The notes beneath the pieces are model-generated. The model had not been told where the DNA came from, did no database searches, and saw only the letters and a list, made by a program, of their open reading frames with translations. From positions 159,507-223,506 of IMG/VR virus record IMGVR_UViG_3300038465_000091: a stretch of 64,000 bases of DNA. One strand, given 5' to 3'. A program made the position numbers and the translations under genes. Below are positions 10,983 through 43,695 of this stretch, in pieces. Positions within the stretch are counted from its first letter, which is position 1. Each line of letters begins with the position of its first letter.

Positions 10983-11942
10983 ATGGCAAATCTTTCTCGT
11001 ACACAACAGCAGACGGCTATGCTTGGACAGTTGCTCAAGACCGCAGGTGGTCGTCAAAAATTAGCGGCGTCGTTGGGACCGTCCCTCCGTCGTCGTCGTG
11101 ACTATATGAGCATTGCTCGTAAGGCTCTTATGGTCGAAACTCTTCCCGATGGCGCACTCCCCATCTACGACAAGGAATTCGATGTTAGCGCGATGACTGT
11201 GGGCTCGACCCCCGGCTCGTCTTTCGTTGAAGCCTTTGTGGTCGGTGAAGAAGGCGGCGACATTGTGCGTGTGACCAAGCCAAAGCGTGTCACGGTTCCG
11301 ACGTTTGAAATCGTGTCCAACCCCATGATCCCGATCACCCAGATCAAGGAACGTCGTTTCGATCTCGTTGCTCGCTCACTCAACCTCGCAAAGGCTGAAG
11401 TAGGCGCGGCAGAAGATGGTTACGTGTTCAATCTGTTTGACGGTGTTGCGGCGGGCGCAGTCGGCCATGCACCAAACGATCCGGTTTACAACCCCGACAT
11501 TCCAATCAACGCCCCCATCGACATCAACTCGCTGGCGGATGGATTTGGTCAGGTTGCACGCCACGATCTGTCGGTTGCTTTCATCTTCTTCAATCCTCGC
11601 GATTACACGGATTTGTTGAAGTGGACGCAGCAAAACATCGACCGTGAAACACAGCGCAAGCTGTTGAAGACGGGCGTCATGGGCTATCTCTGGGGCGCAA
11701 CGCTCCTCCAGTCTCGTAAGGTCGGCTACGGCTGCATCTATATTCTGGCGGACGCTGAGTTCCTCGGCGTAATCCCAGAACGTATTCCGTTGACCGTGAT
11801 GAGTGCCGACCGTCCTGATTTGAGGCAAATCGGATTCTCGATATTTGAGAATTTGGGCTTCCTCGTCTTCAATCCTTCAGGCGTTCAGCGGTTGACCGTT
11901 AACGGTCGCTTCAACGCGGCTGCCAACTTCGGCGAGAACTAA
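10983..11942 (+). CDS. Major capsid protein (HK97 fold)
   Basis: AAGGAG RBS; RRDYMSIARKALMVETLPDGALPIYDKE...RVTVPTFEIVSNP.I...KERRFD...AAEDG...GYLWGA...GFSIFENLG; followed by a strong terminator. Confidence 0.88.
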   Translation: MANLSRTQQQTAMLGQLLKTAGGRQKLAASLGPSLRRRRDYMSIARKALMVETLPDGALPIYDKEFDVSAMTVGSTPGSSFVEAFVVGEEGGDIVRVTKPKRVTVPTFEIVSNPMIPITQIKERRFDLVARSLNLAKAEVGAAEDGYVFNLFDGVAAGAVGHAPNDPVYNPDIPINAPIDINSLADGFGQVARHDLSVAFIFFNPRDYTDLLKWTQQNIDRETQRKLLKTGVMGYLWGATLLQSRKVGYGCIYILADAEFLGVIPERIPLTVMSADRPDLRQIGFSIFENLGFLVFNPSGVQRLTVNGRFNAAANFGEN

Positions 11943-12049: not shown

Positions 12050-12520
12050 ATGCAAAAAATTTATGTAGCCAAGTCCCCGATCAATTTTGTTCAATTTAGC
12101 TTCCGAGTTAACGCGGGGGATATTCTCGTTCACGATACCGTCAATCAAAAGCTGACCGTGTTTCGCAATGGACAGATCGTCAAGACCCTGAAGCAATCTT
12201 CGCTAGGCATGAGTGCTCTCCTCAAGGACCATGCCGAGGAGGTGGTCACTAAGCCGACGCCCCAACCGATTGATCCCGCAGAGTGCCAGCGAATGCTGAA
12301 GCTCTCGTTGCCAAAACTCAAGCCTGACCTACCAAAAACTCCATCAACACCGCAAAAACCGACACAGGAAGAGATTAAACAGAAGCGGAAGAAAGCCCAA
12401 CCGACTGAAGTCTCTACCGATGACCCCGTGTTCCGCGAGCGGATGGGTCTCAAAGACGGTGAGGACCTCGAAGACCCGAAGGTGCGTAAGCGTCTCGGCC
12501 TCAAAGATAAGACGTTCTAA
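12050..12520 (+). CDS. Hypothetical protein
   Basis: 156-aa ORF with a C-terminal tandem motif DPVFRERMGLKD / DPKVRKRLGLKD. Confidence 0.7.
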   Translation: MQKIYVAKSPINFVQFSFRVNAGDILVHDTVNQKLTVFRNGQIVKTLKQSSLGMSALLKDHAEEVVTKPTPQPIDPAECQRMLKLSLPKLKPDLPKTPSTPQKPTQEEIKQKRKKAQPTEVSTDDPVFRERMGLKDGEDLEDPKVRKRLGLKDKTF

Positions 12521-12694
12521 ATGCCAAACCGTAATAAGCCTACCAGCCTACAGACTGAGCCCGCATACCCAGACCATGAAACAGTGTGCTTCTGTATGGG
12601 TGCCCCCGATTTAACCTGTCATTCCGCATCAAGTCGTTGCCTCATTGAGGAGCCGCACCTGATCGTGGGATGTGGAGAATTTGACCATGAATGA
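12521..12694 (+). CDS. Small Cys/His-rich hypothetical protein (57 aa)
   Basis: ATG directly after the previous stop; MPNRNKPT...CFC...CH...C...H...CGEFDHE*. Confidence 0.35.
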   Translation: MPNRNKPTSLQTEPAYPDHETVCFCMGAPDLTCHSASSRCLIEEPHLIVGCGEFDHE

Positions 12695-12732
12695 AGTTAT
12701 TCATCTACCTAACCATTAGGTGGGGGCGTCTT

Positions 12733-13629
12733 GTGATTGTCTACCGCATAACCAACAAAATAAACGGCAAGGTTTATATCGGCAAGACCGTTAAGCCGCT
12801 TACCAGACGTTGGCAACACCACAAAAGAGATGCTCGTGGTGAGAGTCAAGTGTACTTTCATCGCGCTATCCGCAAACACGGTCCGGAATCTTTTATAGTT
12901 GAGCCTGTCTATGTAGCCAAAACTGAGAAAGAGTTGGCTGCGATGGAGACGTTCTTCATTGTCCTGCATCAGTCTTACAAACCAGAAAATGGCTACAACG
13001 GAACTCTTGGTGGGGATGGTATCGGACTTCTCACGGACGAAACCCGTCAACGGATGCGTGATGCTAAAACTCCAGAAATTAGGCGTCGTATGAGTGAGCG
13101 GATGATGGGTGTTCCTCTCTCCATAGAGCATTGTAGGCGCATCGGGGATTCGAAACGTGGTGAAAAAAACCCGCATTGGGGCAAACCACGTAGTGAAGAA
13201 ACCCGTCGCAGGATTGGGAAGGCTCAATTAGGAAAGAAACTATCCCCCGAGCACCGCGAAAAAATAGGTAAAGCGCACCAAGGAAAGGCACTGTCAGAAG
13301 AACATCGTCTTGCCTTGAGTGAGGCCCATAAAGGGTTGGTGTTCTCCGATGAACACCGCAAAAATCTTAGTCAAGCTCTCTCGGGGGAGCGAAACGTTGG
13401 GTACGGCACGAAGTGGGTATCCAAAGATTCCGAAACAATCAGGATTCCTTCCCATCTTCTCGATTCTTATGTAGAACAGGGCTGGACGGCGGGAAGGGCG
13501 TCTTTGTTGGGCAAGAAACCACCTAAAGAACGGATTGAGAAGGTGTTGGCGTACTGGACTCCCGAACGTCGAGCACAGCGGTCGGAGGACTATACTATGC
13601 GACGGGAGAATCAAACACAATGTTCGTAA
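12733..13629 (+). CDS. GIY-YIG homing endonuclease with NUMOD3 repeats
   Basis: IVYRITNKINGKVYIGKT...GYNGTLGG plus repeated S.EHR.KI/LS.A.KG units. Confidence 0.9.
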   Translation: MIVYRITNKINGKVYIGKTVKPLTRRWQHHKRDARGESQVYFHRAIRKHGPESFIVEPVYVAKTEKELAAMETFFIVLHQSYKPENGYNGTLGGDGIGLLTDETRQRMRDAKTPEIRRRMSERMMGVPLSIEHCRRIGDSKRGEKNPHWGKPRSEETRRRIGKAQLGKKLSPEHREKIGKAHQGKALSEEHRLALSEAHKGLVFSDEHRKNLSQALSGERNVGYGTKWVSKDSETIRIPSHLLDSYVEQGWTAGRASLLGKKPPKERIEKVLAYWTPERRAQRSEDYTMRRENQTQCS

Positions 13630-14639
13630 CGATTCCCCTGTCAAAACTGCAACAAAAGTTCGGGGTAAAAACAGCCATCAGTCTTCCCGACTTGGTGCGT
13701 CAAACCAACAGTTTTTCTAAACGCTATAGGCCCGGGTGTACCCCGACTCTCCTTGATTCAAACCCCAAAGCCTTGTTTCTTCACTACAACGTGAAGTGCA
13801 ACAAAGAAGATTCCGACCCGGCGGGACACGATGTGCGTGTTCAATTTGACACGACAAAGGTGCAGGAATCTAGCCAAGCGAAAGACCTCGACGTGCAAAT
13901 TAGCTGCTCCTGCCCTGCGTTTTTGTATTGGGGTGCCCAGTGGAACCTCCACCAGCGAGATGGGCTGCTAGGGACGCCCAGACCGCAGCTACAGGCACCT
14001 ACAGAGCGGCTTGACCTGCGGGGCAACTTCGTTATCTGCAAACACGTCCATTCGGTGTTCGAGCGCATCCTGCCGAGCGTGCAGCACAACATCGTGAAGA
14101 TATTGCGTGAGCGGACGATGCAAGAGAAGAAGGACGAACTGGACAAGACGCCCGAGCGCCTCCAAGAGAAACAGGAGGAGATGAAGAAAAAGAAGGAACT
14201 GGAGAAGATCAGGAAGGTTAAGGACAAGGAGGTTCAGGACAAGCTGTACGAAGCCCTCCGCGAGCAAGAGGAAGCCCGCCTGATGCATGAAGAGGACTTG
14301 GAGGATCAGGTAGAGCCCGTGGTCGAGCGCGACAAGCCAGCGACCGCGCCTGCCGAGGAAAAGCCGAAGCCTGCTCCAGTGCCCGCACCAGCACCAAAGC
14401 CTGCCCCGAATGGAGAAGAAGAGGCGATTCAGAACCTTTATCAGAACGAGCAGGAGAGTATTGAAGAGAAGCACCGTAAGGGCGAGCCTCATTTGCATCA
14501 AGGGCTGCCATACGAAGAAACAGAGGCAAAACCCGTGAAGGAAAAGAAGTCACCTGAGTACATGGAAAAACTTCGAAAGGTCTGGAAGTACGTTAAGGAC
14601 CGCGCAAAAGAACTGGCTCTAAGCGAAGAGGGAAAGTAA
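13620..14639 (+). CDS. SWIM-type Zn-finger protein
   Basis: VQISCSCPAFLYWG...ICKHV (CxC...CxH) followed by a charged coiled-coil tail. Confidence 0.7.
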   Translation: MFVTIPLSKLQQKFGVKTAISLPDLVRQTNSFSKRYRPGCTPTLLDSNPKALFLHYNVKCNKEDSDPAGHDVRVQFDTTKVQESSQAKDLDVQISCSCPAFLYWGAQWNLHQRDGLLGTPRPQLQAPTERLDLRGNFVICKHVHSVFERILPSVQHNIVKILRERTMQEKKDELDKTPERLQEKQEEMKKKKELEKIRKVKDKEVQDKLYEALREQEEARLMHEEDLEDQVEPVVERDKPATAPAEEKPKPAPVPAPAPKPAPNGEEEAIQNLYQNEQESIEEKHRKGEPHLHQGLPYEETEAKPVKEKKSPEYMEKLRKVWKYVKDRAKELALSEEGK

Positions 14640-15673: not shown

Positions 15674-18600
15674 ATGCCTAATGGAAAAATCAGTCAGCTT
15701 GCCTCAGGCATCCCCGCCCAAGGTGGAGACCTGCTCCTCATAACACGCATTGGCTCGCCCAATCAAAGCCTTTCCGTGTCGGCGGCGAGTGTCGCGGCTC
15801 TGGGCGGTGGATCGTTCACCAATCTTGCGACTGGCACCAACACCGCAGCCACATTTACGATAGGCAACGGAGCATCACTCACGTTTTCGGGTATCACATC
15901 CCCAGTCATTACGCAATTAGCTACGGCGTCAGCTTACGCCATCCTCGGTGCATCAGCAGTCACGAACTCGGACGGTGCAAGCACCATAATCAGCGGCGGG
16001 AACATCGGCTCCTTCCCGACCAACACAATCACGCCGGGAAGCCCGCCATGGACTCTTTCGGGTGCAGCAGTGATTACGGCAGTTGCTCAAAACCAGACAG
16101 ACTTGGCTACAGCAATCGCAACTTACCAAGCGATGGGGCCGGGAACCGCCCTTGGTGTGGCTCTCGACGGCCTAACCCTCACCCCCGGCGTTTACAGCGG
16201 CGGCACTTTCACCATCAGCGGCGGAACACTAACTCTCAACGGCGCGGGCGTTTACGTTTTCCTCGCCTCAACTACGATTGGCTTGACGAGTGCTTCAACA
16301 ATCATTCTGGCAGGTGGTGCAACAGCCGCGAACGTTGTTTTCGTTTGTGGCAGTTCATTCACCGCAGCCGCCAACGCTGGCACCGTGTTCAACGGCAACA
16401 TTCTCGCACATACCTCCATTACAGTTGATGGCGGTATTTACAACGGTCGGTTACTTGCCAATATCGGAGCAGTCACCATTTCTACCGCTACCACCATCGC
16501 TACACCAGTGGGCTCTTCTCTTGGCATAATCAATGCGAATGAAATTTTCGGCGTGGTTGTTAGCGGGATAGCCCCAACCGCAGGACAAGTTCTCACAGCA
16601 ACAAGTGCCACAACAGCGAATTGGCAAACTCCCAGCGGGGGCGGCGGTTCGGGAACAGTGACCTCAGGCACCGTGGGACAAATCGCTATTTATGCAGCCA
16701 GCGGCACTACGGTTAGCGGCTTTTCCAATGGCGTGTTTTACCCCGAGACGTATGGCGCGGTTGGCAACGGTATCCACGATGACACTACAGCCATCCAAGC
16801 AGCAATCACAGCCGCTTCAGCGAGCGGTGGAACAGTTCAGTTTGGTGTCAAGACCTACCTTATCACTGCTACGCTTGTAATCACCTCCTCTAATGTCGGC
16901 ATGGCGGGATTGACCGCAGGTACTCCCGTTGGGGGAGGCGCTAGTGGAACCATAATCACTTGCAACAGCGCAACTGTCGATATGGTAAATGTCGGCAACG
17001 GCGGCACACAGGTTCACAGCAATCTTCTAAAAGACTTCTGCCTTGCACGATCCGTCACTCCCACCACTGGAAACGGACTCATACTGAACAGCGTGATCGA
17101 TGCCAAGCTGGAAAACCTCTGGGTCTTCGACAGCATCTTCTGCTTCTATCACCAGAATGCCCAGCTTTGCACGTACACTAATTGCTTAGCTGAATGGACG
17201 GCCCTCAGCAACGGCATCACGGGATACGGCTTTAAGATGGTGGGAACAAACACTACGGGGTTCTTCTCTACGCGAATGACGGACTGTATTGCCATCAACA
17301 AAGCGTCCTCAGGAACTTTCCATGGAATGCACGTAAGCACTTCGGGGGCTGGAGTATCCGATCTTTTCACCGAGGGTTTCGAGACGGCCTCATGCACGTA
17401 TGGAGTGTACATCGACGGAGCTTCATCTAACTTCAACGAAGATATTCATTTCTTAAGAACCATCCACGACGCTTCAACTGTGAGTGCTTTTTATATCACA
17501 GGTTTGAACGGGCACGACGCTTACGTAGAAATAAACGGCGGGTACACAGCTAATCTTGGGTCGGCACCCGCTATCGACATCGAGAACAGTTCTGGAGTTG
17601 TAGTTAACAATGTCAATTTCATCGGGCTCAACGCCGGTACTGGTCCGTGCGTCCTAATAAATGGTTCTAGCTCAAAAGGTAATATCGTTCAGTCGAACGT
17701 GATGTACTGTAGCTCTACGTCGCAGACCGTGATTAGCCTTACGGGGAGTGCCGCGAATAACAACGTCAGCAGCAACATCATAGTTGGAGCCGTGCACAGC
17801 TTCGCCGTTGGTATCGGTCTGGCTTCGTCGTCATACAACACGGTTGACGGAAACACGTTGTCAGGTACGGGCACAGTAGGAATTTCATTGGACACTGGCA
17901 GTGGGCACAACGGTGGAGTCAACGTAGTCGATCCCACATCTATCACAACCCCTCTATTGGATCATGGCACGGGGAATTTCGTTACGATCACTGGAGGCGG
18001 CGGTTCGGGAACGGTCACTCACACGGGTTCGTTGACTTCAAATGCCATCATTCTTGGCAATGGCTCTGCGGATATTAAACCGGGGGTAGTTCTTCCCGGC
18101 AGCGTGACGGTCTATTATGACGGTACGGGAAATTTCAGCGTGCCGGGAGGTGGAGGGGGAAGTCCGGGCTCCCTATTTGCTAAAACGTGGTTTACAACGG
18201 GGCTGGCGGGGCAGAGAGCAATAAATACTGTCTATCAGAACACCACGGGGCAACCCATCATAGTGTTTGGGTGGATGGTGGGAAATAACAACGATCTTCA
18301 AGCCGTGACCGATGCATCTCCCACCCCGTCTACAGTAGTGTTAGACCAGTATGCCCAGTCGGGATTTGGCACCAATTTCTTTTTCATGGTGTCTAACAAC
18401 GATTACTACGAACTCATCTGCGTTGGTGGTACTTCTGTAGCTTGGGTAGAGTTGGAGATTATCACAGGGAGCGTTACATTTTCAGGAGAATTGTCGGGCA
18501 GTCGTTCGCTAAGTACGGTTTACCAAAACACCAGCGGCGGAGCAATGCTGGTGCTGGTCGATCTTTCAAGCGTCGGTGGTGGTACAACCATCCAAGGTAT

Positions 18601-19102
18601 AAGTGACGCTGGCGCTTCCCCCACAAACGTTGTTTGGCAGTCCGATGGGGTCTCCACGGGAAGCCAGACGATCTGGATGATGATTCCGAACAATCATTAC
18701 TACGAAGTGACTTGCTCGGGGGCGTCTGTTGGACATTGGAATGAGTATTCTCTGCCATTCAATGCTTCCAAGTCCATTGATTATTCGATTGCTCCAGTGC
18801 TGAGAAGTCTTCAAGCCATCGCGGGTTCCGCCCCATCAACCACAGGCGTTCAGATAGCGAGTGTGGGCAAAGATATGTTTGTATCGGTGTCATCCCTGCC
18901 TTCAACGACGGGAAATTTGATTATAAACTCCAGTTATTGTTCCCCTCCGGGAACTACTCCGTATGATACCACCACTATGTCGAACACCAATTCGCAACGT
19001 AGTGCGGGGGCACTGTTTGTATCACTTGGGGAATTCTATACCGCTCGACAAAACAGTGGTTCGCCCACGTTGGCTCACTGGTGGGAATATACACTCGGGT
19101 AA
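15674..19102 (+). CDS. Fibre/spike protein: DUF3494 ice-binding-like domain, pectate-lyase-like beta-helix and C-terminal NTVYQNT repeats
   Basis: YAILGASAVTN...LTPGVY...GGATAANVVFVCGSS...GNILAHTSIT...GRLLA (about 15914-16508); YGAVGNGIHDDTTAIQAAI beta-helix start; three C-terminal repeats. Confidence 0.8.
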   Translation: MPNGKISQLASGIPAQGGDLLLITRIGSPNQSLSVSAASVAALGGGSFTNLATGTNTAATFTIGNGASLTFSGITSPVITQLATASAYAILGASAVTNSDGASTIISGGNIGSFPTNTITPGSPPWTLSGAAVITAVAQNQTDLATAIATYQAMGPGTALGVALDGLTLTPGVYSGGTFTISGGTLTLNGAGVYVFLASTTIGLTSASTIILAGGATAANVVFVCGSSFTAAANAGTVFNGNILAHTSITVDGGIYNGRLLANIGAVTISTATTIATPVGSSLGIINANEIFGVVVSGIAPTAGQVLTATSATTANWQTPSGGGGSGTVTSGTVGQIAIYAASGTTVSGFSNGVFYPETYGAVGNGIHDDTTAIQAAITAASASGGTVQFGVKTYLITATLVITSSNVGMAGLTAGTPVGGGASGTIITCNSATVDMVNVGNGGTQVHSNLLKDFCLARSVTPTTGNGLILNSVIDAKLENLWVFDSIFCFYHQNAQLCTYTNCLAEWTALSNGITGYGFKMVGTNTTGFFSTRMTDCIAINKASSGTFHGMHVSTSGAGVSDLFTEGFETASCTYGVYIDGASSNFNEDIHFLRTIHDASTVSAFYITGLNGHDAYVEINGGYTANLGSAPAIDIENSSGVVVNNVNFIGLNAGTGPCVLINGSSSKGNIVQSNVMYCSSTSQTVISLTGSAANNNVSSNIIVGAVHSFAVGIGLASSSYNTVDGNTLSGTGTVGISLDTGSGHNGGVNVVDPTSITTPLLDHGTGNFVTITGGGGSGTVTHTGSLTSNAIILGNGSADIKPGVVLPGSVTVYYDGTGNFSVPGGGGGSPGSLFAKTWFTTGLAGQRAINTVYQNTTGQPIIVFGWMVGNNNDLQAVTDASPTPSTVVLDQYAQSGFGTNFFFMVSNNDYYELICVGGTSVAWVELEIITGSVTFSGELSGSRSLSTVYQNTSGGAMLVLVDLSSVGGGTTIQGISDAGASPTNVVWQSDGVSTGSQTIWMMIPNNHYYEVTCSGASVGHWNEYSLPFNASKSIDYSIAPVLRSLQAIAGSAPSTTGVQIASVGKDMFVSVSSLPSTTGNLIINSSYCSPPGTTPYDTTTMSNTNSQRSAGALFVSLGEFYTARQNSGSPTLAHWWEYTLG

Positions 19103-19126: not shown

Positions 19127-19789
19127 ATGTCCGTTTCGTTTGGTCCTAAAATCCCGCAACTTTTCGTCAGCGCAGCCCTCGGTGATAACTACTACACTGC
19201 GGGTGAGGCAATGCTTCGTAGTTTTCAAGCATTGATTCAGCCGAATGTCATCGGCGTCGGGCTGAACACACCGCCCGGCTCACCTGCCAACGGGGACTCC
19301 TACGTTGTTGGGACTGCTCCCACGGGTTTGTGGACAGGCCAAGCCAACAGTATCGCCTATTGGACTACGGATGATCCCACCAACATACCGGGCTACTGGA
19401 TGTTCTTTGTCCCTAAATCGGGATGGATTGTAGGGAGCGCAGGTCAAATCTATATCTTTGGCACATCGTGGGGGCTCATCTCCTCAGGAGTAGCGATCAA
19501 TAATCAGACAGTCAACTACGTCGCCGCCTTGTCCGACAACAACAACATGACGGACATGAACATGGCTACACCCGGCACGTTCACGGTTCCACCGAACTCC
19601 AGCGTGGCTTTTCCGATTGGCGCGGTTCTGACCGTGGTTCAAGCGGGGATAGGTCAAATCACGTTTGTACAGGGCGCTGGTGTGACCATTAACACCCCCG
19701 CATCGCTGGCAACCCGTACTCAGTTTTCAACAATTGCTGTGACTCAAACCGCCGCAAATGTTTGGCTGGCTAGTGGAGACCTCGCCTAA
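19127..19789 (+). CDS. DUF2793-like tail-associated protein
   Basis: NTPPGSPANGDSYVVGTAPTGLWTGQANSIAYW...W.F..PKSGW; C-terminal VPPNSSVAFPIG...W...GDLA fibre domain. Confidence 0.75.
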   Translation: MSVSFGPKIPQLFVSAALGDNYYTAGEAMLRSFQALIQPNVIGVGLNTPPGSPANGDSYVVGTAPTGLWTGQANSIAYWTTDDPTNIPGYWMFFVPKSGWIVGSAGQIYIFGTSWGLISSGVAINNQTVNYVAALSDNNNMTDMNMATPGTFTVPPNSSVAFPIGAVLTVVQAGIGQITFVQGAGVTINTPASLATRTQFSTIAVTQTAANVWLASGDLA

Positions 19790-20713
19790 ATGAATACGAC
19801 GTTCAAACTATTTCCACACCGCCACAAATGGTTCTCCAAGTATAATTACATTCCGAGTCCGGGAGGTCGTGTTCTTAACACGGTTTATCAGAACACAAAT
19901 GTGAAATCCCTCATCGTTATAGGAGCCGTTAGCGGAATCATGACTATCTTAAGTGATAGCTCTCCGACTCCAACCACTACAATTCTTCAAGGACATGGGT
20001 TTCTGAATCAATGGTTTCCCTTCACTGTCATCGTTCCTCCGGGTGACTACTATGAGATCGTGGGAACGCCTCCTAATTTGCAACTAGAAGCCGAGCTAAC
20101 GGTCAACGGCAGCCCTGTCGTGTTTTCAGGTGATCTCGGTCCAGCAGGCGCAAACACTCGCGCAATGAACACCGTTTATCAAAACACGGCAAGCAAGGCA
20201 AAACTGATCGTGGCGAACATCGGCTCTTCCACTAGCGGTACCATTGGCTTGATCTGTGACGCTTCACCGACTCCAACGACAATAATCGGCGATTCCGTCA
20301 TGTCCAACGGCAGCACATATCAGTTTCCGATGGTCATGATGGTGCCTCAAGGATACTATTACCAAGTAACGGGGTCAGCGACAGTTTCGAACTGGAATGA
20401 GTATACGCTTCCTTTTGGAGCAACGCAGTCGATTGATCTTGTCGGGAGCCGATCCTACGACACGCCCTACTCCGCAGGCGTGAAGGATATGTGGATCACC
20501 GCTTCAGGTAATGTGACGGGTGCGGGTCAAGTCTCTTCTTCTGGCGCTGGTCAACCGGATCCAGTCGGGCAAACCGCATGGTCAACTTGGCTGGGACTGG
20601 ATGCCATGTCTTGGGCACTCGTCCAGCCAAATGACGTGTATGTTCAGACAGCAGTTCAGACAGCAGGAGTGGACGGGACGTTAACACACTGGTTCGAGTA
20701 CGTTTTGGGTTAA
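19790..20713 (+). CDS. Fibre-tip-like protein, paralog of the C-terminus of 15674..19102
   Basis: R..NTVYQNT repeats, WNEYTLPF, and C-terminal TLTHWFEYVLG versus TLAHWWEYTLG. Confidence 0.7.
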   Translation: MNTTFKLFPHRHKWFSKYNYIPSPGGRVLNTVYQNTNVKSLIVIGAVSGIMTILSDSSPTPTTTILQGHGFLNQWFPFTVIVPPGDYYEIVGTPPNLQLEAELTVNGSPVVFSGDLGPAGANTRAMNTVYQNTASKAKLIVANIGSSTSGTIGLICDASPTPTTIIGDSVMSNGSTYQFPMVMMVPQGYYYQVTGSATVSNWNEYTLPFGATQSIDLVGSRSYDTPYSAGVKDMWITASGNVTGAGQVSSSGAGQPDPVGQTAWSTWLGLDAMSWALVQPNDVYVQTAVQTAGVDGTLTHWFEYVLG

Positions 20714-21046: not shown

Positions 21047-24000
21047 ATGAAGCTGGACGCCACACAAGCGGCGGCTGCCAAGCTTTCCCACCTAATCGAG
21101 CCCGGGCGAACCGTCTATTCCACAGACGGCCACGCCTATAGGGTCTTGTCAAAGATCGCCGCTGGCGGCTCCTTGAGCTTCCGACTTGCGAACCTTCAGG
21201 GACAGCCGGTTCCAATCCCCGCAGACTTCTCCCCGATTGACGGGGCTCGGATGCGTTTCGCGTCCTTCCTGAAGTTCGCATTCAACAAAGACCTCACTGC
21301 GATTGTCAACTCACTGATTGAACAGGCGGGGCTCCCCACTGACCCAGCGATGAACTGGGCTGGGTGGTTTCAAAAGGTCTATGGCGAAATCCTAGCATCT
21401 GTTACCCCCAACTTTGATCTCCAAGACGAGATCATGTACAACACCGTCATTAAGCTCCTGATGATGCGTAAGGACAAGGACGGAAAAACACTTCTGGAAA
21501 ACGCTGCCGACAAAATTTCAGGTTTGTCCAGCGGCATTAACAAGATAAAGCGTCAACTTCGTGATCCGAACTTGACTCCAGACGAAAAGAAGACGCTAGA
21601 GAATCGACTCCACTGGCAGGAAAAAGTTAAGGCTGATCCTGTGGAGAAACAAGTCAGCAGCCTCCTGAAGAAAACTTTCGAGTATTACGCACGACATCAT
21701 GCTCGTGTGGATGCGAAAAATTACGCCTATTCGGTGCATACCCCCAGCCATCGCCTCGAAACGGAAAATATCGAAGACGTTGCTATCGAACAACCCACAC
21801 CATCTGGAGAGGGAACGTATAATATCCTTGATACCGAGGAACACGGCGTGGCTCCGGGCGTCGGACTGGGCGAGTCCGAACGCGACATCATGCAGTTCAT
21901 CGATCAATTCCAAGAGTGGGTGAGGGGCAAGGAGACCCCGAAATCCGCTCCTAACTATGCCGAATTGCTCAGGATTTACTGGGATCAGGCACAGCGAATT
22001 GACGATGTTAAGATCAGCGATCTGACTCAAGAGTGGATTCGCCGCACAGGTTTGAGCTTTGACTCCCTGAAGCAGTATCGGGATAAGCTCGGCATCCTGA
22101 TTCGAGATTTCGTCTACGAGAACAAAGTCCAACTGGGCAACTCCTACAAGTTCGTGGACTTGCTAAAGCACATGTTCCCGCCGCCAAAGCAAAAAGCACG
22201 TCCCGCCAAGGCTTCGTCCGACCACCATCACGACCGAACCGAATGCAGAAAGTGCGGCAATGTCCAGACTTGCCGTTGCCCTGCGACCAAGGTCACGTCC
22301 TATGTGGCTTCCTGCGACAACTGCAAGACGGCGGATGGTTTGGAAGCACGAGTGCTTGATCCGAACTGTCCTGAATACAAAAAATACGCCGATGATTTGA
22401 TCCGTCGCTTCGGTCAGACATCGCAGGTCTCCGAGATGCTGGGACAATTCGAAGATGAGCATTTCCCCACTTGTGTACACTGCCAGCAATACAATCAGGA
22501 TTGGCGGGCAGGTAAGGTATCAGCGGCAAAACCCAAGTGCCCCCATTGTGGCTCTGACGATTACGGCTTGATGCCCACGGACTTCGAGACCGCCAAGTGC
22601 AATGGTTGCGGCAAGAACTGGAATCATGGCATCGTCAAGGGTATCAATGATCCGAAGGAAGCTGCTCGCACGGCGGATGATGAAGGAGGGGGTAAAACGT
22701 GCGAAAATTGTGGGAGTTATTACGGTGGGTATACATGTCTTAATTGTGGGCGAAAAAAGAAGCTGGAAGAAGAGGTAGATCGTACCAGCAAGGAACTCAA
22801 GAAGTTCCCCAAGGGACCAACAGGCATGACGCCCGACGATGTGAAGGCTACTCCCGAATGGCAGGCGGCTAAACGTAATTACGGTCAAGCCTTCGCCAAG
22901 CTGCGAGAGTTCAATTCCAAAAAGTGTGCTGCCGATGATCCGACTCGTGACACCCTTGACGAGACGCTGAAGTATGACAACCCAGACAAGGACACCAAGG
23001 GGTTCCACGACCCCGCCGACCTCGGTCAATGCGCCTGTGAGTGGGATGAATGTCCGCTGGGTCACCAAGCGGGTGGGTGCCAGAATCCCGCAGCCCACAT
23101 GCTTGAAATCTATGGATACAAAACCCGCTACTGCCAGCCATGCACCGACGCAACTATCGAGTACATCCGATTGGAACAAGGCACTGGCGATCCCGATGAC
23201 ACGGTTAAGATTCTGTCCTCCGCACATACTGCTGGTGCCCCGTACTGCGACGGTTGTGATCGTCTGAAGGCAAACTGCATCTGCGAAGGCTGCGAGTGCC
23301 CAGAAAATAAAAACGCAGGCAAGTGGGGCGATAAAATCAAGAAGATGGAAGCTCGACGTGGCGAGTTCATCGAGAAAACTCTTAAGAATGCCGTAGGGCC
23401 AACGGAAGAGGATGATCTTGAGATGGCTAGGCGTGGTCCGATTCAATACGAGGAACTACCCGAAATGGAAACCCGAATTCGCCCACGAGAAGAACAGTCG
23501 AAATTTCCGACTCCTCGACCTACTACACGGCGTAAGGAGGGGATGCTCGGTCATGATTTTGTGGATGCCGATCAGCAAGCGATTCGCCCCGACATTACGC
23601 CGGGTGACACTGGGCGCTTACCTCATGGACGCACGCAGGGATCAGTTAAAGAATCTGCGGAACTTGCTGGTCGCGGCGGGGATAAAGATGACGTGCGCGG
23701 TGCGGGCGATCTGTGGCGTGAAGAGTTTTACCAAAGCGGCAATGCGCCCCCAAAGATTGCGACATCAGGTAAATGGAAAGTTCTTCTGCGGGATTCCAAG
23801 GGGAATCAGCGTGAGCAGGAGGTTTCAGGCGTAAATTACGGCTCTGCCGAACGTGCTGTGAGAAAATATATGAAGAATGGTGAAAGGGTTGTGTCGATGA
23901 CTATCGCAAGCAAGACGGCTGCCCCCGCTCCTGCGGCACCCGCACAGGCACAAGCACCAGCGCCCGCCCCAGCACCAGCAGCCACTCCCGCCCCTCCAGC

Positions 24001-39008: not shown

Positions 39009-40409
39009 TTAATCATGCCAAGCGGCGACGTGAACGTGACCTGTGTGAGGAATGGAATCATTGTTTGAAACCCAAACGTTCAAGCCTACGCCAGCAATCG
39101 TCTGAAAAGCGACGTAACTGACCCCGACGCTCGGGAACTGCGTGACGGTGGGTGTGCCGGGTGCCACTTCATCTCCAAGTACGGTGACTTGTACCGTGTA
39201 GTTGTTGTCCGCGAATGCCGAGGAAAACGTCATTGCGATGGGGCCTGTGACCCCACCCTGAGTAAAAGATGTGGCGGTGGAACGTACAGTCTTAAATTTA
39301 CTGCCGCCCGTCGCGGCGTCCACGTAGGCTGTAGTTGCGATCTGGGTGTTATTCGTGAGCGGGGCCGCCGTGGGAGCAGTCGGAGTACCACTGAGTGCGG
39401 GAGACGACAACAGAGCGTAACCCGACAAGGCTGCGACAGTGATGAAGCCCTGTGAAGTAGCAAATGTCTCCGCGTTAGATTGAGCCGTAGCCGCTGCGCC
39501 AAATGCGTCGTAGAACGCCGAGTAATCCCCCGTCAGAGGTATTACCGCCCCCACACGACCGTTGAAGGAGCTTACACCCCCGCCCCCGCCTGCGGGAGTC
39601 AACCAGCTTGCTTTTAGTGGCACGATGATGGTTGTTGCAGCCGTAATGGTTACCGCACCAGTCAAAGCGATGGCCTGACCATTCAAGGTGCCCCCGCCTA
39701 ACGTGACACTTGTGTGGGCTAGAATCGTGCCGACCATGTTGCTAGTTGCAACTGATGTGAAAGAGCTACCGACTAGCCAGATGACAGTCGTGTTAGAGGA
39801 TGTTGCGAAACCTGAGAAACTTACGGATTGACCAGAAGCCAAATTTACCGTGCTTACGGCTTTGAAGATGTATGTGCCGGGGGCTGTGAGTACGATACCC
39901 GTTGGCATCGTCATCGAGCTTGTGGATGAGTAATTACCGGGAGCATACGTATTGCCGCCGCCGATACCACCTATGCTCAGATTGGTGCCGAGCGGTGTGA
40001 AAGTAAGCCCGCTGTAGTACGTGTATGCTGCCTGAGCCGCCGTTTGAGCCGCCGATGCATCGGCGCTGTCCACTATTGCTGGGGGTGGATTGAAGCCCGT
40101 GATTGTGGCGGTGGGAAAGGAGCCGATGGTTCCGCTAGTGACGACGGACGATGACCCTGTGTTCGTGATTCCGCTACCGGCGAGGATGGCGTAATTTGCC
40201 GCCGACCCTAACTGGGAATTTGCGATTATCGTCGTGAGGACCTGTCCGGGAATGGGGGCAACACCATCGAATGCCACGCCGCCGTTTATCACGGCGTCAA
40301 GTGCTCCCCAGTTGAAGTTATACTCGCGGTGTTCCTGATCGTCGTACCGCGATAAGATCAAGCCGAGGACTGGCGTGATTGTGTTGCCAAGTTGGGAATT
40401 ATAGCTCAT
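39009..40409 (-). CDS. Fibre protein with a DUF3494 ice-binding-like domain
   Basis: LGSAANYAILAGSGITNTG...VIWLVGSS...GTILAHTSVT...LNGQAIA; VSSFNGRVGAV and SPALSGTPTAPTA...TQIATTAYV fibre motifs; ATGA overlap with the upstream gene. Confidence 0.8.
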   Translation of the reverse strand: MSYNSQLGNTITPVLGLILSRYDDQEHREYNFNWGALDAVINGGVAFDGVAPIPGQVLTTIIANSQLGSAANYAILAGSGITNTGSSSVVTSGTIGSFPTATITGFNPPPAIVDSADASAAQTAAQAAYTYYSGLTFTPLGTNLSIGGIGGGNTYAPGNYSSTSSMTMPTGIVLTAPGTYIFKAVSTVNLASGQSVSFSGFATSSNTTVIWLVGSSFTSVATSNMVGTILAHTSVTLGGGTLNGQAIALTGAVTITAATTIIVPLKASWLTPAGGGGGVSSFNGRVGAVIPLTGDYSAFYDAFGAAATAQSNAETFATSQGFITVAALSGYALLSSPALSGTPTAPTAAPLTNNTQIATTAYVDAATGGSKFKTVRSTATSFTQGGVTGPIAMTFSSAFADNNYTVQVTVLGDEVAPGTPTVTQFPSVGVSYVAFQTIAGVGLNVWVSNNDSIPHTGHVHVAAWHD

Positions 40410-41131
40410 AGATGCGTTTCCGTGTGCTTCCCTCTCGTGCAGCCACAACCTTTTGTGTGCCCGTTTCGCAGACTTGTACCTTCAGCGTTGAAGGTATTAC
40501 CACATCGACAACGACAGTGCCATGCCGCCTTTCCAGATTTTGTGTTGCTAACCCTGTCCATTACTGCGACACCGTTGATAATTACACCGAACATGTCTTT
40601 AGCGGGCTTAGGTTTAAGTTCTGGATGACTTCTAGATTGCTGGGCGATACACATATTGGCGATTGCTTCTGGGCCACGTTTGCGTCCAAGCCTAGCGTCT
40701 CTCAATTTTTTCCTACATTCTTCAGTATTAAGCGCAAATTTAATCTTAATAATGGTTTCAGGTGATACTTTACGCCCATGCTGTGCGACACTCATTTTAC
40801 GCCGACTCTCTTCAGTGTGAGGTCCAGTGAAACCTTCCCCACCTCGACAAATGTTGTAACCGTACTCGGGGTCTTGGGATTTGAGGAAGGCGATGAAGTC
40901 TCGTTCGTAAGCGTCAAGTTCTGGACGGGTCTGGATGTCCGACAGAAGAGCGTGGATGGTGAAGGCTTCAATGGGGCACTCTCTTAAAGCCTCGTACAGT
41001 CTAGACCGTTTCGATACTCCCTTTCTGGCGTGTCCAAATTTCTGCTGAAGATATTTCCTCAAGTTGTCACCCTTGTGCTGCCCCACGTAATATTTTCCTG
41101 TAGCATGGTTGACGATAAGGTAGATGTACAT
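40406..41131 (-). CDS. GIY-YIG homing endonuclease
   Basis: MYIYLIVN..TGKYYVGQ...GYNICRGG, NUMOD3 repeat, C-terminal W.CRCRCG...L..G.TKGCGC. Confidence 0.88.
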   Translation of the reverse strand: MYIYLIVNHATGKYYVGQHKGDNLRKYLQQKFGHARKGVSKRSRLYEALRECPIEAFTIHALLSDIQTRPELDAYERDFIAFLKSQDPEYGYNICRGGEGFTGPHTEESRRKMSVAQHGRKVSPETIIKIKFALNTEECRKKLRDARLGRKRGPEAIANMCIAQQSRSHPELKPKPAKDMFGVIINGVAVMDRVSNTKSGKAAWHCRCRCGNTFNAEGTSLRNGHTKGCGCTRGKHTETHL

Positions 41132-41181: not shown

Positions 41182-43695
41182 TTAAGAATGGCTGATCGCT
41201 ACCGCAGCGATGAGGGTCTCATAGCCGAGTGGGTTCGCGAATGATGGTGTCCAAGAGCCGGGTGCTCCCTGAACGCCCCACTCCACAAGGTAGTGAGCTT
41301 CAGAGCCGACCAGCTTACCATTGCTGGCTCTGCTGTAGCCGCCGTTGGTGATGCTGCCGCTTCCGCCGGGAGCCGTGATGACGGTCGTAGCCGTGACGGT
41401 GACCGCTCCGTTACCACCACCCACGGCAAGTGCACGCCCATTGAGGGTGCCGCCGCCGAGAGTGATCGAGGTGTAAGCCAAGATGTCGCCGACCATGTTG
41501 CTGTTGGCAACTGAAGTGAAGGAGCTTCCAACCACCCAGACCACGTTCTGGGCCTGTGCGCCGTTAGCGAGGATGATGGACTGACCGCTCTCAAGCGTTA
41601 CAGTCGATGCCGCGACGAACACAAAGACCGCGTTCGAGTTGCCTTGAGCGTCGAGAGTGATGGAGGTCGGAATGTCCAACGCCCCACCTTTATAGACGCC
41701 AGCGTGGTACACACCTGCCCCACCACCACCGTTGTTGGTGCTGAGGTTGGCAAGACCCGACTGGGTTGCGGTCAGACCGCTGTAGTAGCCAAACGCCGCG
41801 TTACCCGCGAGTCGCGCTGCCGCCGCATCTGCGTTGTCCACGATTGCCGCTGGGGGATTGAAACCAGTGATGGTCATGGTCGGGGCCGAACCGATGTCGC
41901 CGCCCGTTATTGAAGTCGAGGACGAAGCGTTCGTGATCCCGCTGTATGCCAACAGAGCATAGTTAGCAGCCGAACCCAATTCAGCGTTGACAGAGGAACT
42001 GTAGGCTATCAGCGTAGAGTCCGTGCCGAGGCCGAGACCGTTGGCGTTCTTCTGGAGACCTACTACGATGACAAGATCGCCAGTTGGCGGCGAGCCGCTG
42101 CCGGACGTGACTATCGCGGCGGTAACAGCGGGATTAGCCGCCGTGATTGCCGTCTGCGAGAAACTGGCTGGAGAACCACCATCTTCGATTGCCACGCCCG
42201 TCATGCCCGTCCAATCAATCACTTGGAAGTTGATGCCGCCGTCGAATACTGGCTTGCCAGCCGCGAGGTCGAGCGGAGCCGTAATACCGTTCTGATATAC
42301 GGAGTTGAGGTTGACTGGGTAAGAGCCGCCGATTGCCGAGGCGCAGACCCAAACGTAGAGACTTGGGTAATAGCCGTCGATGTTCCAATCCGCTGCTGGC
42401 CATGGGAGGTTAGCAGCGGGAGGAATCGAATACCCGCTGTAGTCCGCGTCCGCGAGGTTGATGCTTGCCACGAGTACCCAGTTGTTTCCTGCGGAAACCG
42501 TTCCCCCACCCGGCGAAGTGACAGCCGTGGCGGTACTGATGCTGATTGCACCAGACGTTACCACGATGCCCGCGAGTGCGCGACCGTTGAGGACGCCGCC
42601 GCCGAGAGTGATGCTGGTGTTGGCGAGAATCGTACCGACCATTGTGCTTGTTGCAACGCTGGTAAAGGAGCTACCGACGATCCAGACTACGTTAGCCGCC
42701 TGCGCCCCGTTGATGAGGGTCACAGCCTGCCCGCTTGCTAGATTTACTGTTGACGCTGATTTGAAGATGAACAGAGCGCCCGAGTTGCCTTGAGCGTCAA
42801 GAACGATGCCCGTGCTCATTGCCATGCTGGAGGTAGCGGAGTAGTTGCCTGCTCGGTAGACGTTACCGCCTGCGATACCCGACGTACTCAGATCGACCAC
42901 GCCGCCGAGTGACGTAAAGGTCAATCCTGAGAAGTAGTTGTACGCCGCGAGAGCGTCAGTTTGAGCCTGCGCTGCGTCTGCGTTGTCAACCACTGCGGGA
43001 GGAACGAGAACCCACGCGCCCGGTGTGATGGTCGTGGTCGGGAATGAGCCGACGTTACCACCCGTGATGACGGACGAGCCCGAGTTCGTGATTCCAGCAG
43101 CCGCCAACAGTACGTAGTTCGCTGCCGACAGTAAGTGCTGGTTGACGACGGGAATCGGGGTGGTGGAGTTGTGGTCCGAGATTGTCGGAGCAGGCGGCAT
43201 GAAGTCGTTCAAGCCCTGAAGGTAACCGAAATTGGGGGACAAGCCGTGAAGCTGATCGAACGGGTCGAGACTCTTGAGGCCGAATGCGATGGCTACAAGT
43301 GTATCGCCAGCCAATGGGCTGACATAGACGTTATCGCCTTGGTCGTTTGCCCACATGTTCGAGACTTTTGAAGCGTACTGCAAAGGTGTGCCCCATCCAA
43401 CAACCAGTTGGACCTGACCAGCGGCAACTACCGCCATGCCATTGCGGTTGTTGAGGACGAGGGTCGTTGCGGAAGATTGGAGGCACAGGAACGTGCCATT
43501 GTTGCTCGCATTGGCGAAACCGCTGACGGTAAAAGCCTGACCTGCGTAGGCTCCGTTCGGCTGTGTTGCCGTGACTGCCCCACCAGTGATGGTTCCAGTG
43601 TAGGTTGTGCTGGCACTTGGCGACCCGGGAAACGGGTAAACTGCATTGCCGACCTGCGTCAATACGAAAACTGGACCGATTGTTGGTACGCCCAT
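41182..43695 (-). CDS. Virion appendage protein with two DUF3494 ice-binding-like domains
   Basis: Two copies of SAANY.LLA..GITN...LDAQGNS.A.F.F...NGAQA.NVVW.VGSS...G.ILA.TSITLGGG.LNGRALA (about 43137-42510 and 41983-41370). Confidence 0.85.
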   Translation of the reverse strand: MGVPTIGPVFVLTQVGNAVYPFPGSPSASTTYTGTITGGAVTATQPNGAYAGQAFTVSGFANASNNGTFLCLQSSATTLVLNNRNGMAVVAAGQVQLVVGWGTPLQYASKVSNMWANDQGDNVYVSPLAGDTLVAIAFGLKSLDPFDQLHGLSPNFGYLQGLNDFMPPAPTISDHNSTTPIPVVNQHLLSAANYVLLAAAGITNSGSSVITGGNVGSFPTTTITPGAWVLVPPAVVDNADAAQAQTDALAAYNYFSGLTFTSLGGVVDLSTSGIAGGNVYRAGNYSATSSMAMSTGIVLDAQGNSGALFIFKSASTVNLASGQAVTLINGAQAANVVWIVGSSFTSVATSTMVGTILANTSITLGGGVLNGRALAGIVVTSGAISISTATAVTSPGGGTVSAGNNWVLVASINLADADYSGYSIPPAANLPWPAADWNIDGYYPSLYVWVCASAIGGSYPVNLNSVYQNGITAPLDLAAGKPVFDGGINFQVIDWTGMTGVAIEDGGSPASFSQTAITAANPAVTAAIVTSGSGSPPTGDLVIVVGLQKNANGLGLGTDSTLIAYSSSVNAELGSAANYALLAYSGITNASSSTSITGGDIGSAPTMTITGFNPPAAIVDNADAAAARLAGNAAFGYYSGLTATQSGLANLSTNNGGGGAGVYHAGVYKGGALDIPTSITLDAQGNSNAVFVFVAASTVTLESGQSIILANGAQAQNVVWVVGSSFTSVANSNMVGDILAYTSITLGGGTLNGRALAVGGGNGAVTVTATTVITAPGGSGSITNGGYSRASNGKLVGSEAHYLVEWGVQGAPGSWTPSFANPLGYETLIAAVAISHS

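What the first reader, a model, noticed from the sequence alone, without database searches (positions are those of the whole stretch)
15674..19102. Ice-binding-like domain fused to a depolymerase-like beta-helix in one virion fibre
Seen: DUF3494 (about 15914-16508), then a pectate-lyase-like beta-helix, then triple tip repeats. Established: DUF3494 (IBP-1) domains bind ice and inhibit recrystallisation in cold-adapted microbes, and beta-helix tailspikes bind or degrade polysaccharide. Inference: the virion adheres to ice or is freeze-protected while engaging host EPS.
Basis: partly seen in the sequence, partly recalled or inferred. Interest (0 to 1): 0.7.

Follow-up and report, generated by a model that had tools for sequence, protein, structure and literature searches.

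The report
Phage tailspike carrying an ice-binding-like domain
A giant phage from peat and permafrost soils encodes a tail spike that carries a genuine ice-binding-protein-type domain in front of a sugar-degrading-type beta-helix; the same domain sits in four more of its large proteins and in tail sheaths and fibres of other peat phages, but whether it binds ice or host sugars is untested.

Summary
Window 15674-19102 (+) is one 1142-aa gene. Pfam PF11999 (Ice_binding/DUF3494) matches aa 90-273 (E 5.9e-24, 85 bits against a cut-off of 28.7). An AlphaFold model of that part (pLDDT >90) matches only solved IBP-1 ice-binding proteins. Next comes a right-handed beta-helix (VIA Z 39 to AlgE4, 37.8 to the Sf6 tailspike). 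At the C-terminus are two clear ~97-aa repeats (hhalign E 1e-21) and a doubtful third.

The record is a 223.5-kb, roughly 71%-complete jumbo phage related to the Arctic Acidobacteriota phage Tunturi_5. Its DNA occurs in about 20 runs labelled peat or permafrost.

New findings:
- The phage has six PF11999 domains in five large proteins.
- The domain is a shuffled module. The closest spike homologues lack it, and one has a PA14 sugar-binding domain in the equivalent N-terminal position.
- In other large phage contigs the domain is inserted in tail sheath and tail fibre proteins.
- It was not found in 50,697 GenBank phage genomes or in PHROGs.

Ice binding is plausible (about 0.4) but unproven. 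The Thr/Ser-rich putative ice face is family-wide, and related domains occur in bacteria with no known link to ice. Glycan adhesion is a near-equal rival.

The parts
15674..19102 (+). Whole gene: a 1142-aa modular tailspike or fibre (P0002)
   Evidence: ORF and start codon. The identical protein is called on 5 independent contigs.
15674..15895 (+). N-terminal region, aa 1-74: presumed virion anchor, not modelled
   Evidence: pLDDT 42-58. No paralogue in the genome. No Pfam or PHROG match above threshold.
15896..16513 (+). Ice_binding / DUF3494 (IBP-1 fold) module, aa 75-280; Pfam match covers aa 90-273
   Evidence: PF11999 E 5.9e-24. AlphaFold pLDDT >90. The top 31 PDB Foldseek hits are all IBP-1 ice-binding proteins; 7bwx gives TMt 0.83 and rmsd 2.1. 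A family profile matches 6eio at E 8e-58.
16514..16726 (+). Linker or shaft segment, aa 281-351, with a Gly run at aa 322-325
   Evidence: Low pLDDT. Gly runs located. BLAST against homologues shows the module boundaries.
16727..17992 (+). Right-handed parallel beta-helix, aa 352-773, tailspike/depolymerase-like, with a conserved acidic cluster (D563, E567, E570, D599, D635, E637)
   Evidence: pLDDT 80-95. VIA Z 39.4 to AlgE4, 37.8 to the Sf6 tailspike, 36.7 to phi29 gp12. PHROG 'tail spike protein' families at E 4e-7 to 9e-4, and PF12708 at 24 bits. Invariant acidic residues.
17993..18178 (+). Gly-flanked connector, aa 774-835 (Gly runs at 774-777 and 825-829)
   Evidence: Low pLDDT.
18179..18469 (+). 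Tip repeat 1, aa 836-932
   Evidence: hhalign against repeat 2: probability 99.4%, E 1.2e-21. phrog_33574 matches with 2 stretches.
18470..18760 (+). Tip repeat 2, aa 933-1029
18761..19099 (+). Tip unit 3, aa 1030-1142: divergent, homology to units 1 and 2 only tentative
   Evidence: hhalign against repeat 2: E 0.0025, probability 12%, full-length register, shared C-terminal W-x-E-Y.
19127..19789 (+). Adjacent DUF2793 tail-fibre-like protein (220 aa)
   Evidence: PF10983 E 2.3e-15 and tail-fibre PHROGs.
19790..20713 (+). Free-standing paralogue (307 aa) of the three-unit tip module
   Evidence: 39% identity to aa 845-1142. tblastn E 1e-30. phrog_33574.
39009..40448 (-). Second PF11999 protein (479 aa): DUF3494 at aa 88-272 followed by a tail-fibre-like part
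   Evidence: PF11999 E 4e-25. Tail fibre PHROGs E 6e-9.
41182..43695 (-). Third PF11999 protein (837 aa) with two tandem DUF3494 domains
   Evidence: PF11999 E 4e-61 with 2 stretches. Both copies located.
13620..14639 (+). Upstream structural-module gene, homologue of Tunturi_5 gp336 ('tail protein')
   Evidence: 54% identity, E 1e-87. Synteny with Tunturi_5, where gp336 is followed by the gp337 tail fibre.
10983..11942 (+). Major head protein, which places the gene in the virion structural module
   Evidence: phrog_2522 E 1.3e-42. 72.9% nucleotide identity to the Tunturi_5 major head protein gene.

Best explanation
The gene encodes a modular receptor-binding tailspike of an uncultivated jumbo phage, probably a myovirus of Acidobacteriota related to Tunturi_5, living in peat and permafrost soil.

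Shown:
- Four modules are separated by Gly-rich linkers: a short N-terminal region, a bona fide IBP-1/DUF3494 beta-solenoid, a right-handed parallel beta-helix of the tailspike/polysaccharide-enzyme type, and a repeated C-terminal tip.
- The DUF3494 unit is an exchangeable cassette. It is present in five proteins of this phage and in sheath and fibre proteins of other peat phages.

Inferred:
- The protein is on the virion (from synteny and fold).
- The beta-helix binds, and probably cleaves, the host's exopolysaccharide. A conserved acidic cluster lies on successive rungs.
- The tip repeats contact the cell surface.
- The DUF3494 module projects sideways near the base of the spike as an accessory adhesion domain.

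My committed reading is that its ligand is ice. Its flat, uncharged Thr/Ser B face would bind the ice lattice as in EfcIBP. Dozens to hundreds of copies per particle (spikes, fibres, and in relatives the sheath) would give high avidity. The virion would then stick to ice surfaces and locally inhibit recrystallisation during freeze-thaw, staying intact and next to host cells in the unfrozen films. Ice binding itself is not shown.
For: - Family and fold: PF11999 at 85 bits. The model has pLDDT >90, and only IBP-1 ice binders are significant PDB matches. The family profile hits the validated ice binders EfcIBP (6eio) at E 8e-58 and AnpIBP (7bwx) at E 8e-50.
- Putative B face: 13 of 16 outward positions are Thr/Ser, none bulky, one Asp at the edge. 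This is almost the same pattern as EfcIBP read from the alignment. EfcIBP B-face sites T67 and T223 align to T97 and T250. This face is more conserved (85%) than the rest of the domain (73%) among close phage homologues.
- Habitat: about 20 runs labelled peat or permafrost hold the gene. A second DUF3494 phage contig is also from peat/permafrost runs.
- Recurrence on virion parts: six domains in five proteins of this phage. Other contigs carry it in tail sheath proteins (phrog_279 E 1e-22 to 1e-29) and tail fibre proteins. A sheath is not a receptor-binding site, which favours a general surface-adhesion role.
- Virion context: major head protein, protease, gp336 homologue and DUF2793 fibre nearby.
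- Beta-helix: Z 35-39 to tailspikes and alginate epimerases, with invariant acidic residues.
- Contigs from RNA libraries, 100% identical, lie on the gene.
Against: - No activity data exist.
- PF11999 relatives at 35-44% identity occur in Streptomyces, Bradyrhizobium, Magnetospirillum, a Bifidobacteriaceae MAG, a Syntrophomonas MAG and a Centralia MAG. They carry the same Thr/Ser ladder (8-12 of 16), so neither the fold nor the face is diagnostic of ice binding.
- Every solved DUF3494 structure was chosen because the protein binds ice, so the PDB matches are biased.
- Tunturi_5, an Arctic tundra relative, has no PF11999. No GenBank phage has it, including whatever isolates from cold habitats that collection holds (not checked one by one).
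- Homologue P0008 has a PA14 (glycan-binding) domain in the equivalent N-terminal position, and P0003/P0004 have nothing recognisable there.
- The other four paralogous proteins of this phage have bulkier or charged residues on the lower rungs of the face.
- Face assignment rests on alignment and strand periodicity, not on coordinates.
- Virion location is not shown by proteomics.
Confidence: 0.4

Rival explanations
1. The DUF3494 module is an accessory carbohydrate or cell-surface adhesion domain. It binds host exopolysaccharide or the soil organic matrix, as Ig-like, PA14 or CBM decorations do on other phages. It concentrates virions on EPS-rich Acidobacteriota before the beta-helix digests a path. 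Ice plays no part.
For: A homologous spike (P0008, 55% identity over the helix and tip) carries a PA14/GLEYA lectin-type domain in the equivalent N-terminal position. Related domains occur in autotransporter adhesins and Ig-rich giant proteins. They also occur in bacteria with no known ice association. A published survey describes DUF3494 proteins as 'ice-binding and substrate-binding' and involved in surface adhesion (PMC12337378). Flat Thr/Ser-rich solenoid faces can also hydrogen-bond sugars (general knowledge).
Against: To my knowledge no PF11999 domain has a demonstrated non-ice ligand. The module's face is highly conserved between phages whose other fibre parts differ, which is unexpected for host-specific glycan recognition. 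The two phage lineages whose habitat was checked both come from peat/permafrost runs.
Confidence: 0.35
2. The DUF3494 solenoid is a ligand-free structural element: a rigid spacer, a shield or stabiliser for exposed virion proteins, or a docking platform that lets several fibre types assemble into a branched complex.
For: In four of the five proteins of this phage (five of its six copies) the domain lies within about 400 residues of the N-terminus, after a short leader. That is where branched tailspike systems such as CBA120 carry their docking domains (general knowledge). Beta-solenoids are common rigid building blocks. Closest homologues work without it.
Against: Insertion into tail sheath proteins and into the middle of a 2070-aa Ig-rich protein does not fit a fibre-docking role. 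Conservation is higher on one solvent-facing sheet than elsewhere, which suggests a ligand surface. No partner was tested.
Confidence: 0.15
3. The fusion is an artefact (chimeric assembly or miscalled ORF), or the protein is not part of the virion.
For: The record is a metagenomic assembly estimated at 71% complete. There are no proteomic data.
Against: The identical 1142-aa protein is found on five contigs from different assemblers and samples. Contigs of two further runs span the junctions with no differences. The frame is uninterrupted and has a ribosome-binding site. The gene lies in a structural module syntenic with Tunturi_5.
Confidence: 0.03

Closest known systems
EfcIBP (PDB 6EIO), AnpIBP (7BWX) and IBPv (5UYT): characterised DUF3494/IBP-1 ice-binding proteins
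   Same: Same Pfam family and fold: profile E 8e-58 to 1e-49, TMt up to 0.83, 28-32% identity. The B face is Thr/Ser-rich as in EfcIBP. Tandem copies, as in IBPv, occur in the 837-aa paralogue.
   Different: Those are small secreted proteins of cold-adapted microbes. Here the domain has no signal peptide and is one module inside a 1142-aa phage spike. Ice activity is untested.
Multidomain bacterial ice adhesins: SfIBP_1 of Shewanella frigidimarina (6BG8; Ig-like domains plus DUF3494) and MpIBP of Marinomonas primoryensis
   Same: The ice-binding module is displayed at the end of a long surface protein and combined with Ig-like or sugar-binding modules. The 2070-aa paralogue has five He_PIG Ig domains plus DUF3494. 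A homologous spike has PA14.
   Different: Those are cell-surface adhesins of bacteria; this is a virus particle. MpIBP's ice-binding domain has a different fold from DUF3494.
Beta-helix tailspikes and polysaccharide enzymes: Sf6 tailspike (2VBK), phi29 gp12 (3GQ7), CBA120 TSP3 (5W6F), K5A lyase (2X3H), AlgE4 A-module (2PYG)
   Same: Right-handed parallel beta-helix, Z 33-39, rmsd 1.9-2.9 over 335-385 residues. N-cap motif Y-G-A-x-G-(D/N)-G-x-x-D-D as in PF12708 proteins.
   Different: Only 13-20% identity. The catalytic residues of those enzymes were not mapped. An IBP-1 domain precedes the helix, which none of them has.
Tunturiibacter phage Tunturi_5 (PP885688), gp337 tail fibre
   Same: Same position in a syntenic head-tail module. 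The major head protein gene is 73% identical at the DNA level and the gp336 homologue is 54% identical. It is also a jumbo phage from cold soil.
   Different: No detectable sequence similarity to gp337. No PF11999 anywhere in the Tunturi_5 genome.
Virion decoration domains (Ig-like Hoc of T4; PA14, CBM or BACON modules on phage structural proteins)
   Same: A small, exchangeable, surface-exposed module added to sheath, fibre and spike proteins. A PA14 domain occupies the equivalent N-terminal position in a homologue.
   Different: Different fold. The ligand is unknown and may be ice rather than glycans.
DUF3494 proteins of Hyperionvirus (a giant-virus metagenomic bin)
   Same: These are the only viral proteins with this fold in BFVD: 3 hits, E 1e-12 to 8e-7.
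   Different: They come from a eukaryotic giant virus and are stand-alone or unknown-context proteins, not tailed-phage virion parts.

Membership tests
PF11999 Ice_binding / DUF3494 (IBP-1 fold) | Sequence match to the Pfam model above the gathering score | tested here: met
   85.3 bits against 28.7, E 5.9e-24, model positions 1-206 of 208. Confirmed on the genome at 88.9 bits.
PF11999 Ice_binding / DUF3494 (IBP-1 fold) | Discontinuous triangular beta-solenoid braced by one long alpha-helix | tested here: met
   The AlphaFold model of aa 75-280 has pLDDT >90, with a helix at 138-153 and about 20 short strands. All 31 significant PDB matches are IBP-1 structures.
Functional ice-binding protein | Flat, regular, largely uncharged ice-binding face (B face) | tested here: inconclusive
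   By alignment to EfcIBP, 13 of 16 outward positions are Thr/Ser and none is bulky. Controls from bacteria with no ice link show 8-12 of 16.
Functional ice-binding protein | Thermal hysteresis, ice shaping or recrystallisation inhibition | not testable with these tools
   Needs recombinant protein.
Functional ice-binding protein | Source organism lives with ice | tested here: met
   Runs holding the gene are labelled peat or permafrost metagenome. The labels do not give temperature or freezing history.
Phage tailspike / polysaccharide depolymerase | Right-handed parallel beta-helix domain | tested here: met
   Z 39.4 (AlgE4), 37.8 (Sf6 tailspike), 36.7 (phi29 gp12). Tail spike PHROGs at E 4e-7 to 9e-4.
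Phage tailspike / polysaccharide depolymerase | Catalytic acidic residues in a groove; enzymatic cleavage | tested here: inconclusive
   D563, E570, D599 and E637 are invariant and E567 nearly so across 13 homologues; D635 is nearly invariant among the 10 closest. They are spaced about one rung apart. They were not mapped onto any known active site.
Phage tailspike / polysaccharide depolymerase | Encoded in the virion structural module and present in particles | tested here: inconclusive
   Synteny with the Tunturi_5 head-tail module and neighbouring fibre genes. There are no proteomic data.
Phage tailspike / polysaccharide depolymerase | Homotrimer | not tested
   Only monomer models were made.
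PF12708 Pect-lyase_RHGA_epim | Pfam match above the gathering score | tested here: not met
   24.0 bits against a cut-off of 27, N-terminal third only. Homologues P0003, P0007 and P0008 do pass, so P0002 is a divergent relative.

The most novel reading that the evidence does not exclude
Jumbo phages of peat and permafrost soils build multivalent ice-binding virions. An exchangeable IBP-1 cassette is displayed on spikes, fibres and, in some lineages, along the whole tail sheath. The cassette lets particles adhere to ice and suppress recrystallisation, so they survive freeze-thaw and stay beside their hosts. These would be the first ice-binding structural proteins of any virus.
Probability: 0.35. 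Interest if true: 0.85.

Novelty: new variant of a known kind. Interest (0 to 1): 0.62.

Why it matters
How viruses persist and stay infective through freezing in soils, permafrost and ice is poorly understood. Ice-binding proteins have so far been treated as a cellular adaptation.

If the domain binds ice, phage particles would be natural multivalent ice binders. That bears on viral survival and host encounter in frozen ground that is now thawing, on horizontal spread of IBP genes, and on phage cryopreservation and ice-active materials.

If it binds glycans instead, PF11999 gains its first non-ice function. That would change how tens of thousands of 'ice-binding-like' annotations in metagenomes should be read.

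Either outcome can be tested directly with one recombinant domain.

Tried and rejected
- One alignment of the whole protein with homologue fragments (A1) scattered the DUF3494 fragments across the helix. I dropped it and folded two parts separately.
- The C-terminal tip (aa 782-1142) did not fold (pLDDT 25-40). Pfam gave nothing for it. The ESM Atlas returned only small unnamed phage clusters. Its fold stays unknown.
- BLASTP self-comparison missed the repeats. Profile comparison found them.
- tblastn of the protein, its domain and a paralogous domain against 50,697 GenBank phage records gave no match. PHROGs has no family for the domain.
- The search for related loci with the 54-sequence alignment failed because no stretch was conserved enough. 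I repeated it with the six own-genome domains, which biases the hits towards close relatives, so I drew no habitat statistics from the 57 IMG/VR loci.
- I rejected B-face composition as a discriminator of ice binders after the control.
- There is no similarity to the positional analogue Tunturi_5 gp337.
- Literature searches for phage or viral DUF3494/ice-binding structural proteins found nothing relevant. The sample id was not found in papers.
- I rejected the assembly-chimera explanation.
- I did not use complex prediction, because the report claims no specific protein-protein contact.
- From memory, the IMG sample ids look like Stordalen Mire and similar peat projects. I could not verify this and did not use it as evidence.
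Full report
**1. What is there**

Window 15674-19102 (+) is a single open frame of 1142 codons. It starts at an ATG preceded by GGGAG.

Pfam finds PF11999 (Ice_binding, DUF3494) at aa 90-273 with E 5.9e-24 and 85.3 bits, against a gathering score of 28.7. The match covers model positions 1-206 of 208. A single-sequence search of the PDB already hits an ice-binding protein (4nuh). It also hits the beta-helix adhesin PfbA, over the N-cap motif of PF12708-type helices.

Three glycine runs (aa 322-325, 774-777, 825-829) separate the modules.

An independent check shows the fusion is real. The identical protein is called on five contigs from JGI and Logan assemblies. Contigs of two further runs span the module junctions without a single difference.

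**2. The three modules**

*DUF3494 module.* An AlphaFold model of aa 1-345, built on a 54-row alignment, gives pLDDT >90 for aa ~75-280. It has one long helix (138-153) and about twenty short strands. Foldseek against the PDB returns 31 significant matches, and all are IBP-1 ice-binding proteins. Examples are 7bwx (TMt 0.83, rmsd 2.1 Å, 32% identity), 6eio and 6bg8. Everything after them has E of 0.3 or more. A profile of the family hits EfcIBP (6eio) at E 8e-58 and AnpIBP (7bwx) at E 8e-50.

*Beta-helix.* A model of aa 297-1142 is confident for aa ~352-774. This part aligns with the AlgE4 and AlgE6 mannuronan epimerase modules (Z 39), the Sf6 tailspike (Z 37.8), phi29 gp12 (Z 36.7), CBA120 TSP3 and K5A lyase. 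Pfam PF12708 is just below threshold at 24 bits against 27. PHROG 'tail spike protein' families match at E 4e-7 to 9e-4. Among 13 homologues an acidic cluster is conserved: D563, E570, D599 and E637 invariant, E567 nearly so, and D635 nearly invariant among the 10 closest. Its spacing is about one rung. That fits a carbohydrate-active groove, but I did not map it to a known active site.

*C-terminal tip.* This part did not fold (pLDDT 25-40). Profile comparison shows that aa 836-932 and 933-1029 are a tandem duplication (probability 99.4%, E 1.2e-21). The last 113 residues match only weakly, in the same register. The next-but-one gene (19790-20713) is a free-standing paralogue of this tip.

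**3. The genome and its habitat**

The window is the last 64 kb of a 223.5-kb IMG/VR virus record estimated at 71% complete.

The surrounding genes include a head maturation protease, a major head protein, a GIY-YIG homing endonuclease and a DUF2793 tail-fibre protein. The only GenBank phage with DNA similarity is Tunturiibacter phage Tunturi_5. This is a 309-kb jumbo myovirus of Acidobacteriota from Arctic tundra soil (PMC11924767).

The module is syntenic with Tunturi_5. The gene two places upstream of the spike (13620-14639) is 54% identical to Tunturi_5 gp336, and the spike sits where Tunturi_5 has its gp337 'tail fiber protein'. The two fibres share no sequence similarity.

About 20 public runs hold the gene, and all are labelled peat or permafrost metagenome. 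They include metatranscriptomic libraries whose 100%-identical short contigs lie on the gene. DNA carry-over in those libraries cannot be excluded.

**4. The domain is not a one-off**

PF11999 occurs six times in five proteins of this phage:
- this spike;
- an 837-aa protein with two copies (window 41182-43695, minus strand);
- a 479-aa protein whose C-terminal part matches tail-fibre PHROGs (window 39009-40448, minus strand);
- a 1066-aa protein outside the window;
- a 2070-aa protein outside the window with five He_PIG Ig-like domains.

The module is a cassette:
- The closest relatives of the helix-plus-tip (P0003 and P0004, 73% and 68% identity over aa ~297-1142) lack it.
- P0012 and P0056 share only the module (71-74% identity over aa 64-291), inside otherwise unrelated tail-fibre proteins.
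- In homologue P0008 the equivalent N-terminal position is occupied by a PA14/GLEYA carbohydrate-binding domain.

In other large phage contigs (100-200 kb) the domain is inserted into tail sheath proteins. P0035, P0039 and P0043 match phrog_279 at E 1e-22 to 1e-29, and P0038 matches more weakly.

A narrow pattern scan of IMG/VR found 57 loci. One of these other lineages is again held by peat and permafrost runs.

By contrast, the domain is missing from the reference phage collections:
- No match in 50,697 GenBank phage records.
- No PHROG family.
- No copy in Tunturi_5.
- In BFVD only three proteins of a giant-virus bin (Hyperionvirus) have the fold.
- I found no paper describing it in phages.

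**5. Does it bind ice?**

Six EfcIBP residues have been mutated to Tyr in published work: T67, T178 and T223 on the B face, and S188, T209 and T247 on the C face. I recalled these from the literature. All six fall on the right residue type in chain 6eio_A with one fixed offset of 22. Using the alignment they map to T97, G203 and T250, and to A213, N234/A235 and T273 of the spike. This fixes which strands form the B face.

The 16 outward positions inferred for that face are 13 Thr/Ser, one Ala, one Gly and one Asp, with nothing bulky. The pattern is nearly the same as in EfcIBP. Among the close phage homologues these positions are 85% identical, against 73% for the rest of the domain (Fisher p 0.017, sequences not independent).

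That is compatible with an ice-binding site, but it is not diagnostic. Domains from Streptomyces, Bradyrhizobium, Magnetospirillum, a Bifidobacteriaceae MAG and a Syntrophomonas MAG are relatives at 35-44% identity. They have 8-11 Thr/Ser at the same positions. Domains from Cryobacterium, an Antarctic MAG and a palsa MAG have 11-12.

The family is large: 3705 cluster representatives at E ≤ 1e-3, many in giant multi-copy proteins and autotransporters. A recent survey describes it as both ice-binding and substrate-binding (PMC12337378).

**6. Verdict**

The gene is a modular tailspike with a genuine IBP-1 module in an accessory position. The module is one of a family of virion decorations in peat and permafrost phages.

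I favour ice as the ligand, at about 0.4. The reasons are as follows:
- Every characterised PF11999 protein binds ice.
- The habitat freezes.
- The conserved face resembles that of EfcIBP.
- Display on a tail sheath argues for a general surface ligand rather than a specific host receptor.

Glycan or EPS adhesion is nearly as likely (about 0.35), mainly because of the PA14 domain in the homologous spike and the family's spread beyond icy habitats. A purely structural role (about 0.15) fits the sheath and mid-protein insertions poorly.

I class this as a new variant of known kinds: an IBP-1 domain combined with a beta-helix tailspike. One recombinant domain would settle the question.

Noticed in passing
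Loci L022 (P0043, gene at 10001-12751); proteins P0035, P0039, P0038: Tail sheath proteins of other 100-200 kb phage contigs carry a PF11999 ice-binding-like domain inserted N-terminal to the conserved sheath core (phrog_279 E 1e-22 to 1e-29). This would display the domain in many copies (one per sheath subunit) along the tail.
   Followed up: partly
window 41182-43695 (-), 39009-40448 (-); G000:C1:53038-56238 (-); G000:C1:97142-103354 (+): Four further large proteins of the same phage carry PF11999: one with two tandem copies, one followed by a tail-fibre part, and one with five He_PIG Ig-like domains. That makes six copies in a record estimated at 71% complete.
   Followed up: partly
window 12691-13629 (+) and 40406-41170 (-): Two GIY-YIG/NUMOD3 homing endonuclease genes sit inside structural gene clusters. 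One lies between the major head protein gene and the spike region. The other lies between the two DUF3494 genes on the minus strand. They could promote the module shuffling seen here.
   Followed up: no
window 19790-20713 (+): A free-standing 307-aa paralogue of the spike's three-unit tip lies directly after a DUF2793 fibre gene (19127-19789). The two may form a second, two-piece fibre. The fold of the ~100-aa unit is unknown (phrog_33574, unknown function).
   Followed up: partly
window 13620-14639 (+): This protein is 54% identical to Tunturi_5 gp336, which is annotated 'tail protein'. It contains a conserved C-x-C ... C-x-H motif resembling a SWIM-type zinc finger and a Lys/Glu-rich, Pro/Ala-rich tail, which is odd for a tail protein.
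   Followed up: no
window 21047-26950 (+) and 58086-63773 (+): Two giant ORFs (1967 and 1895 aa). The first has essentially no family match (one weak PHROG of unknown function, no Pfam); the second was not scanned.
   Followed up: no
window 47478-48737 (+), 51301-53028 (+), 29901-30860 (-): Two glycosyltransferase-like genes (GtrB-like; phrog_3317) and a DNA methyltransferase. These suggest the phage modifies host surface glycans or its own DNA.
   Followed up: no
BFVD entries A0A3G5A745, A0A3G5ACG7, A0A3G5AEI1: Three DUF3494 proteins of Hyperionvirus sp. (a giant-virus metagenomic bin) are the only viral proteins in BFVD with this fold.
   Followed up: no
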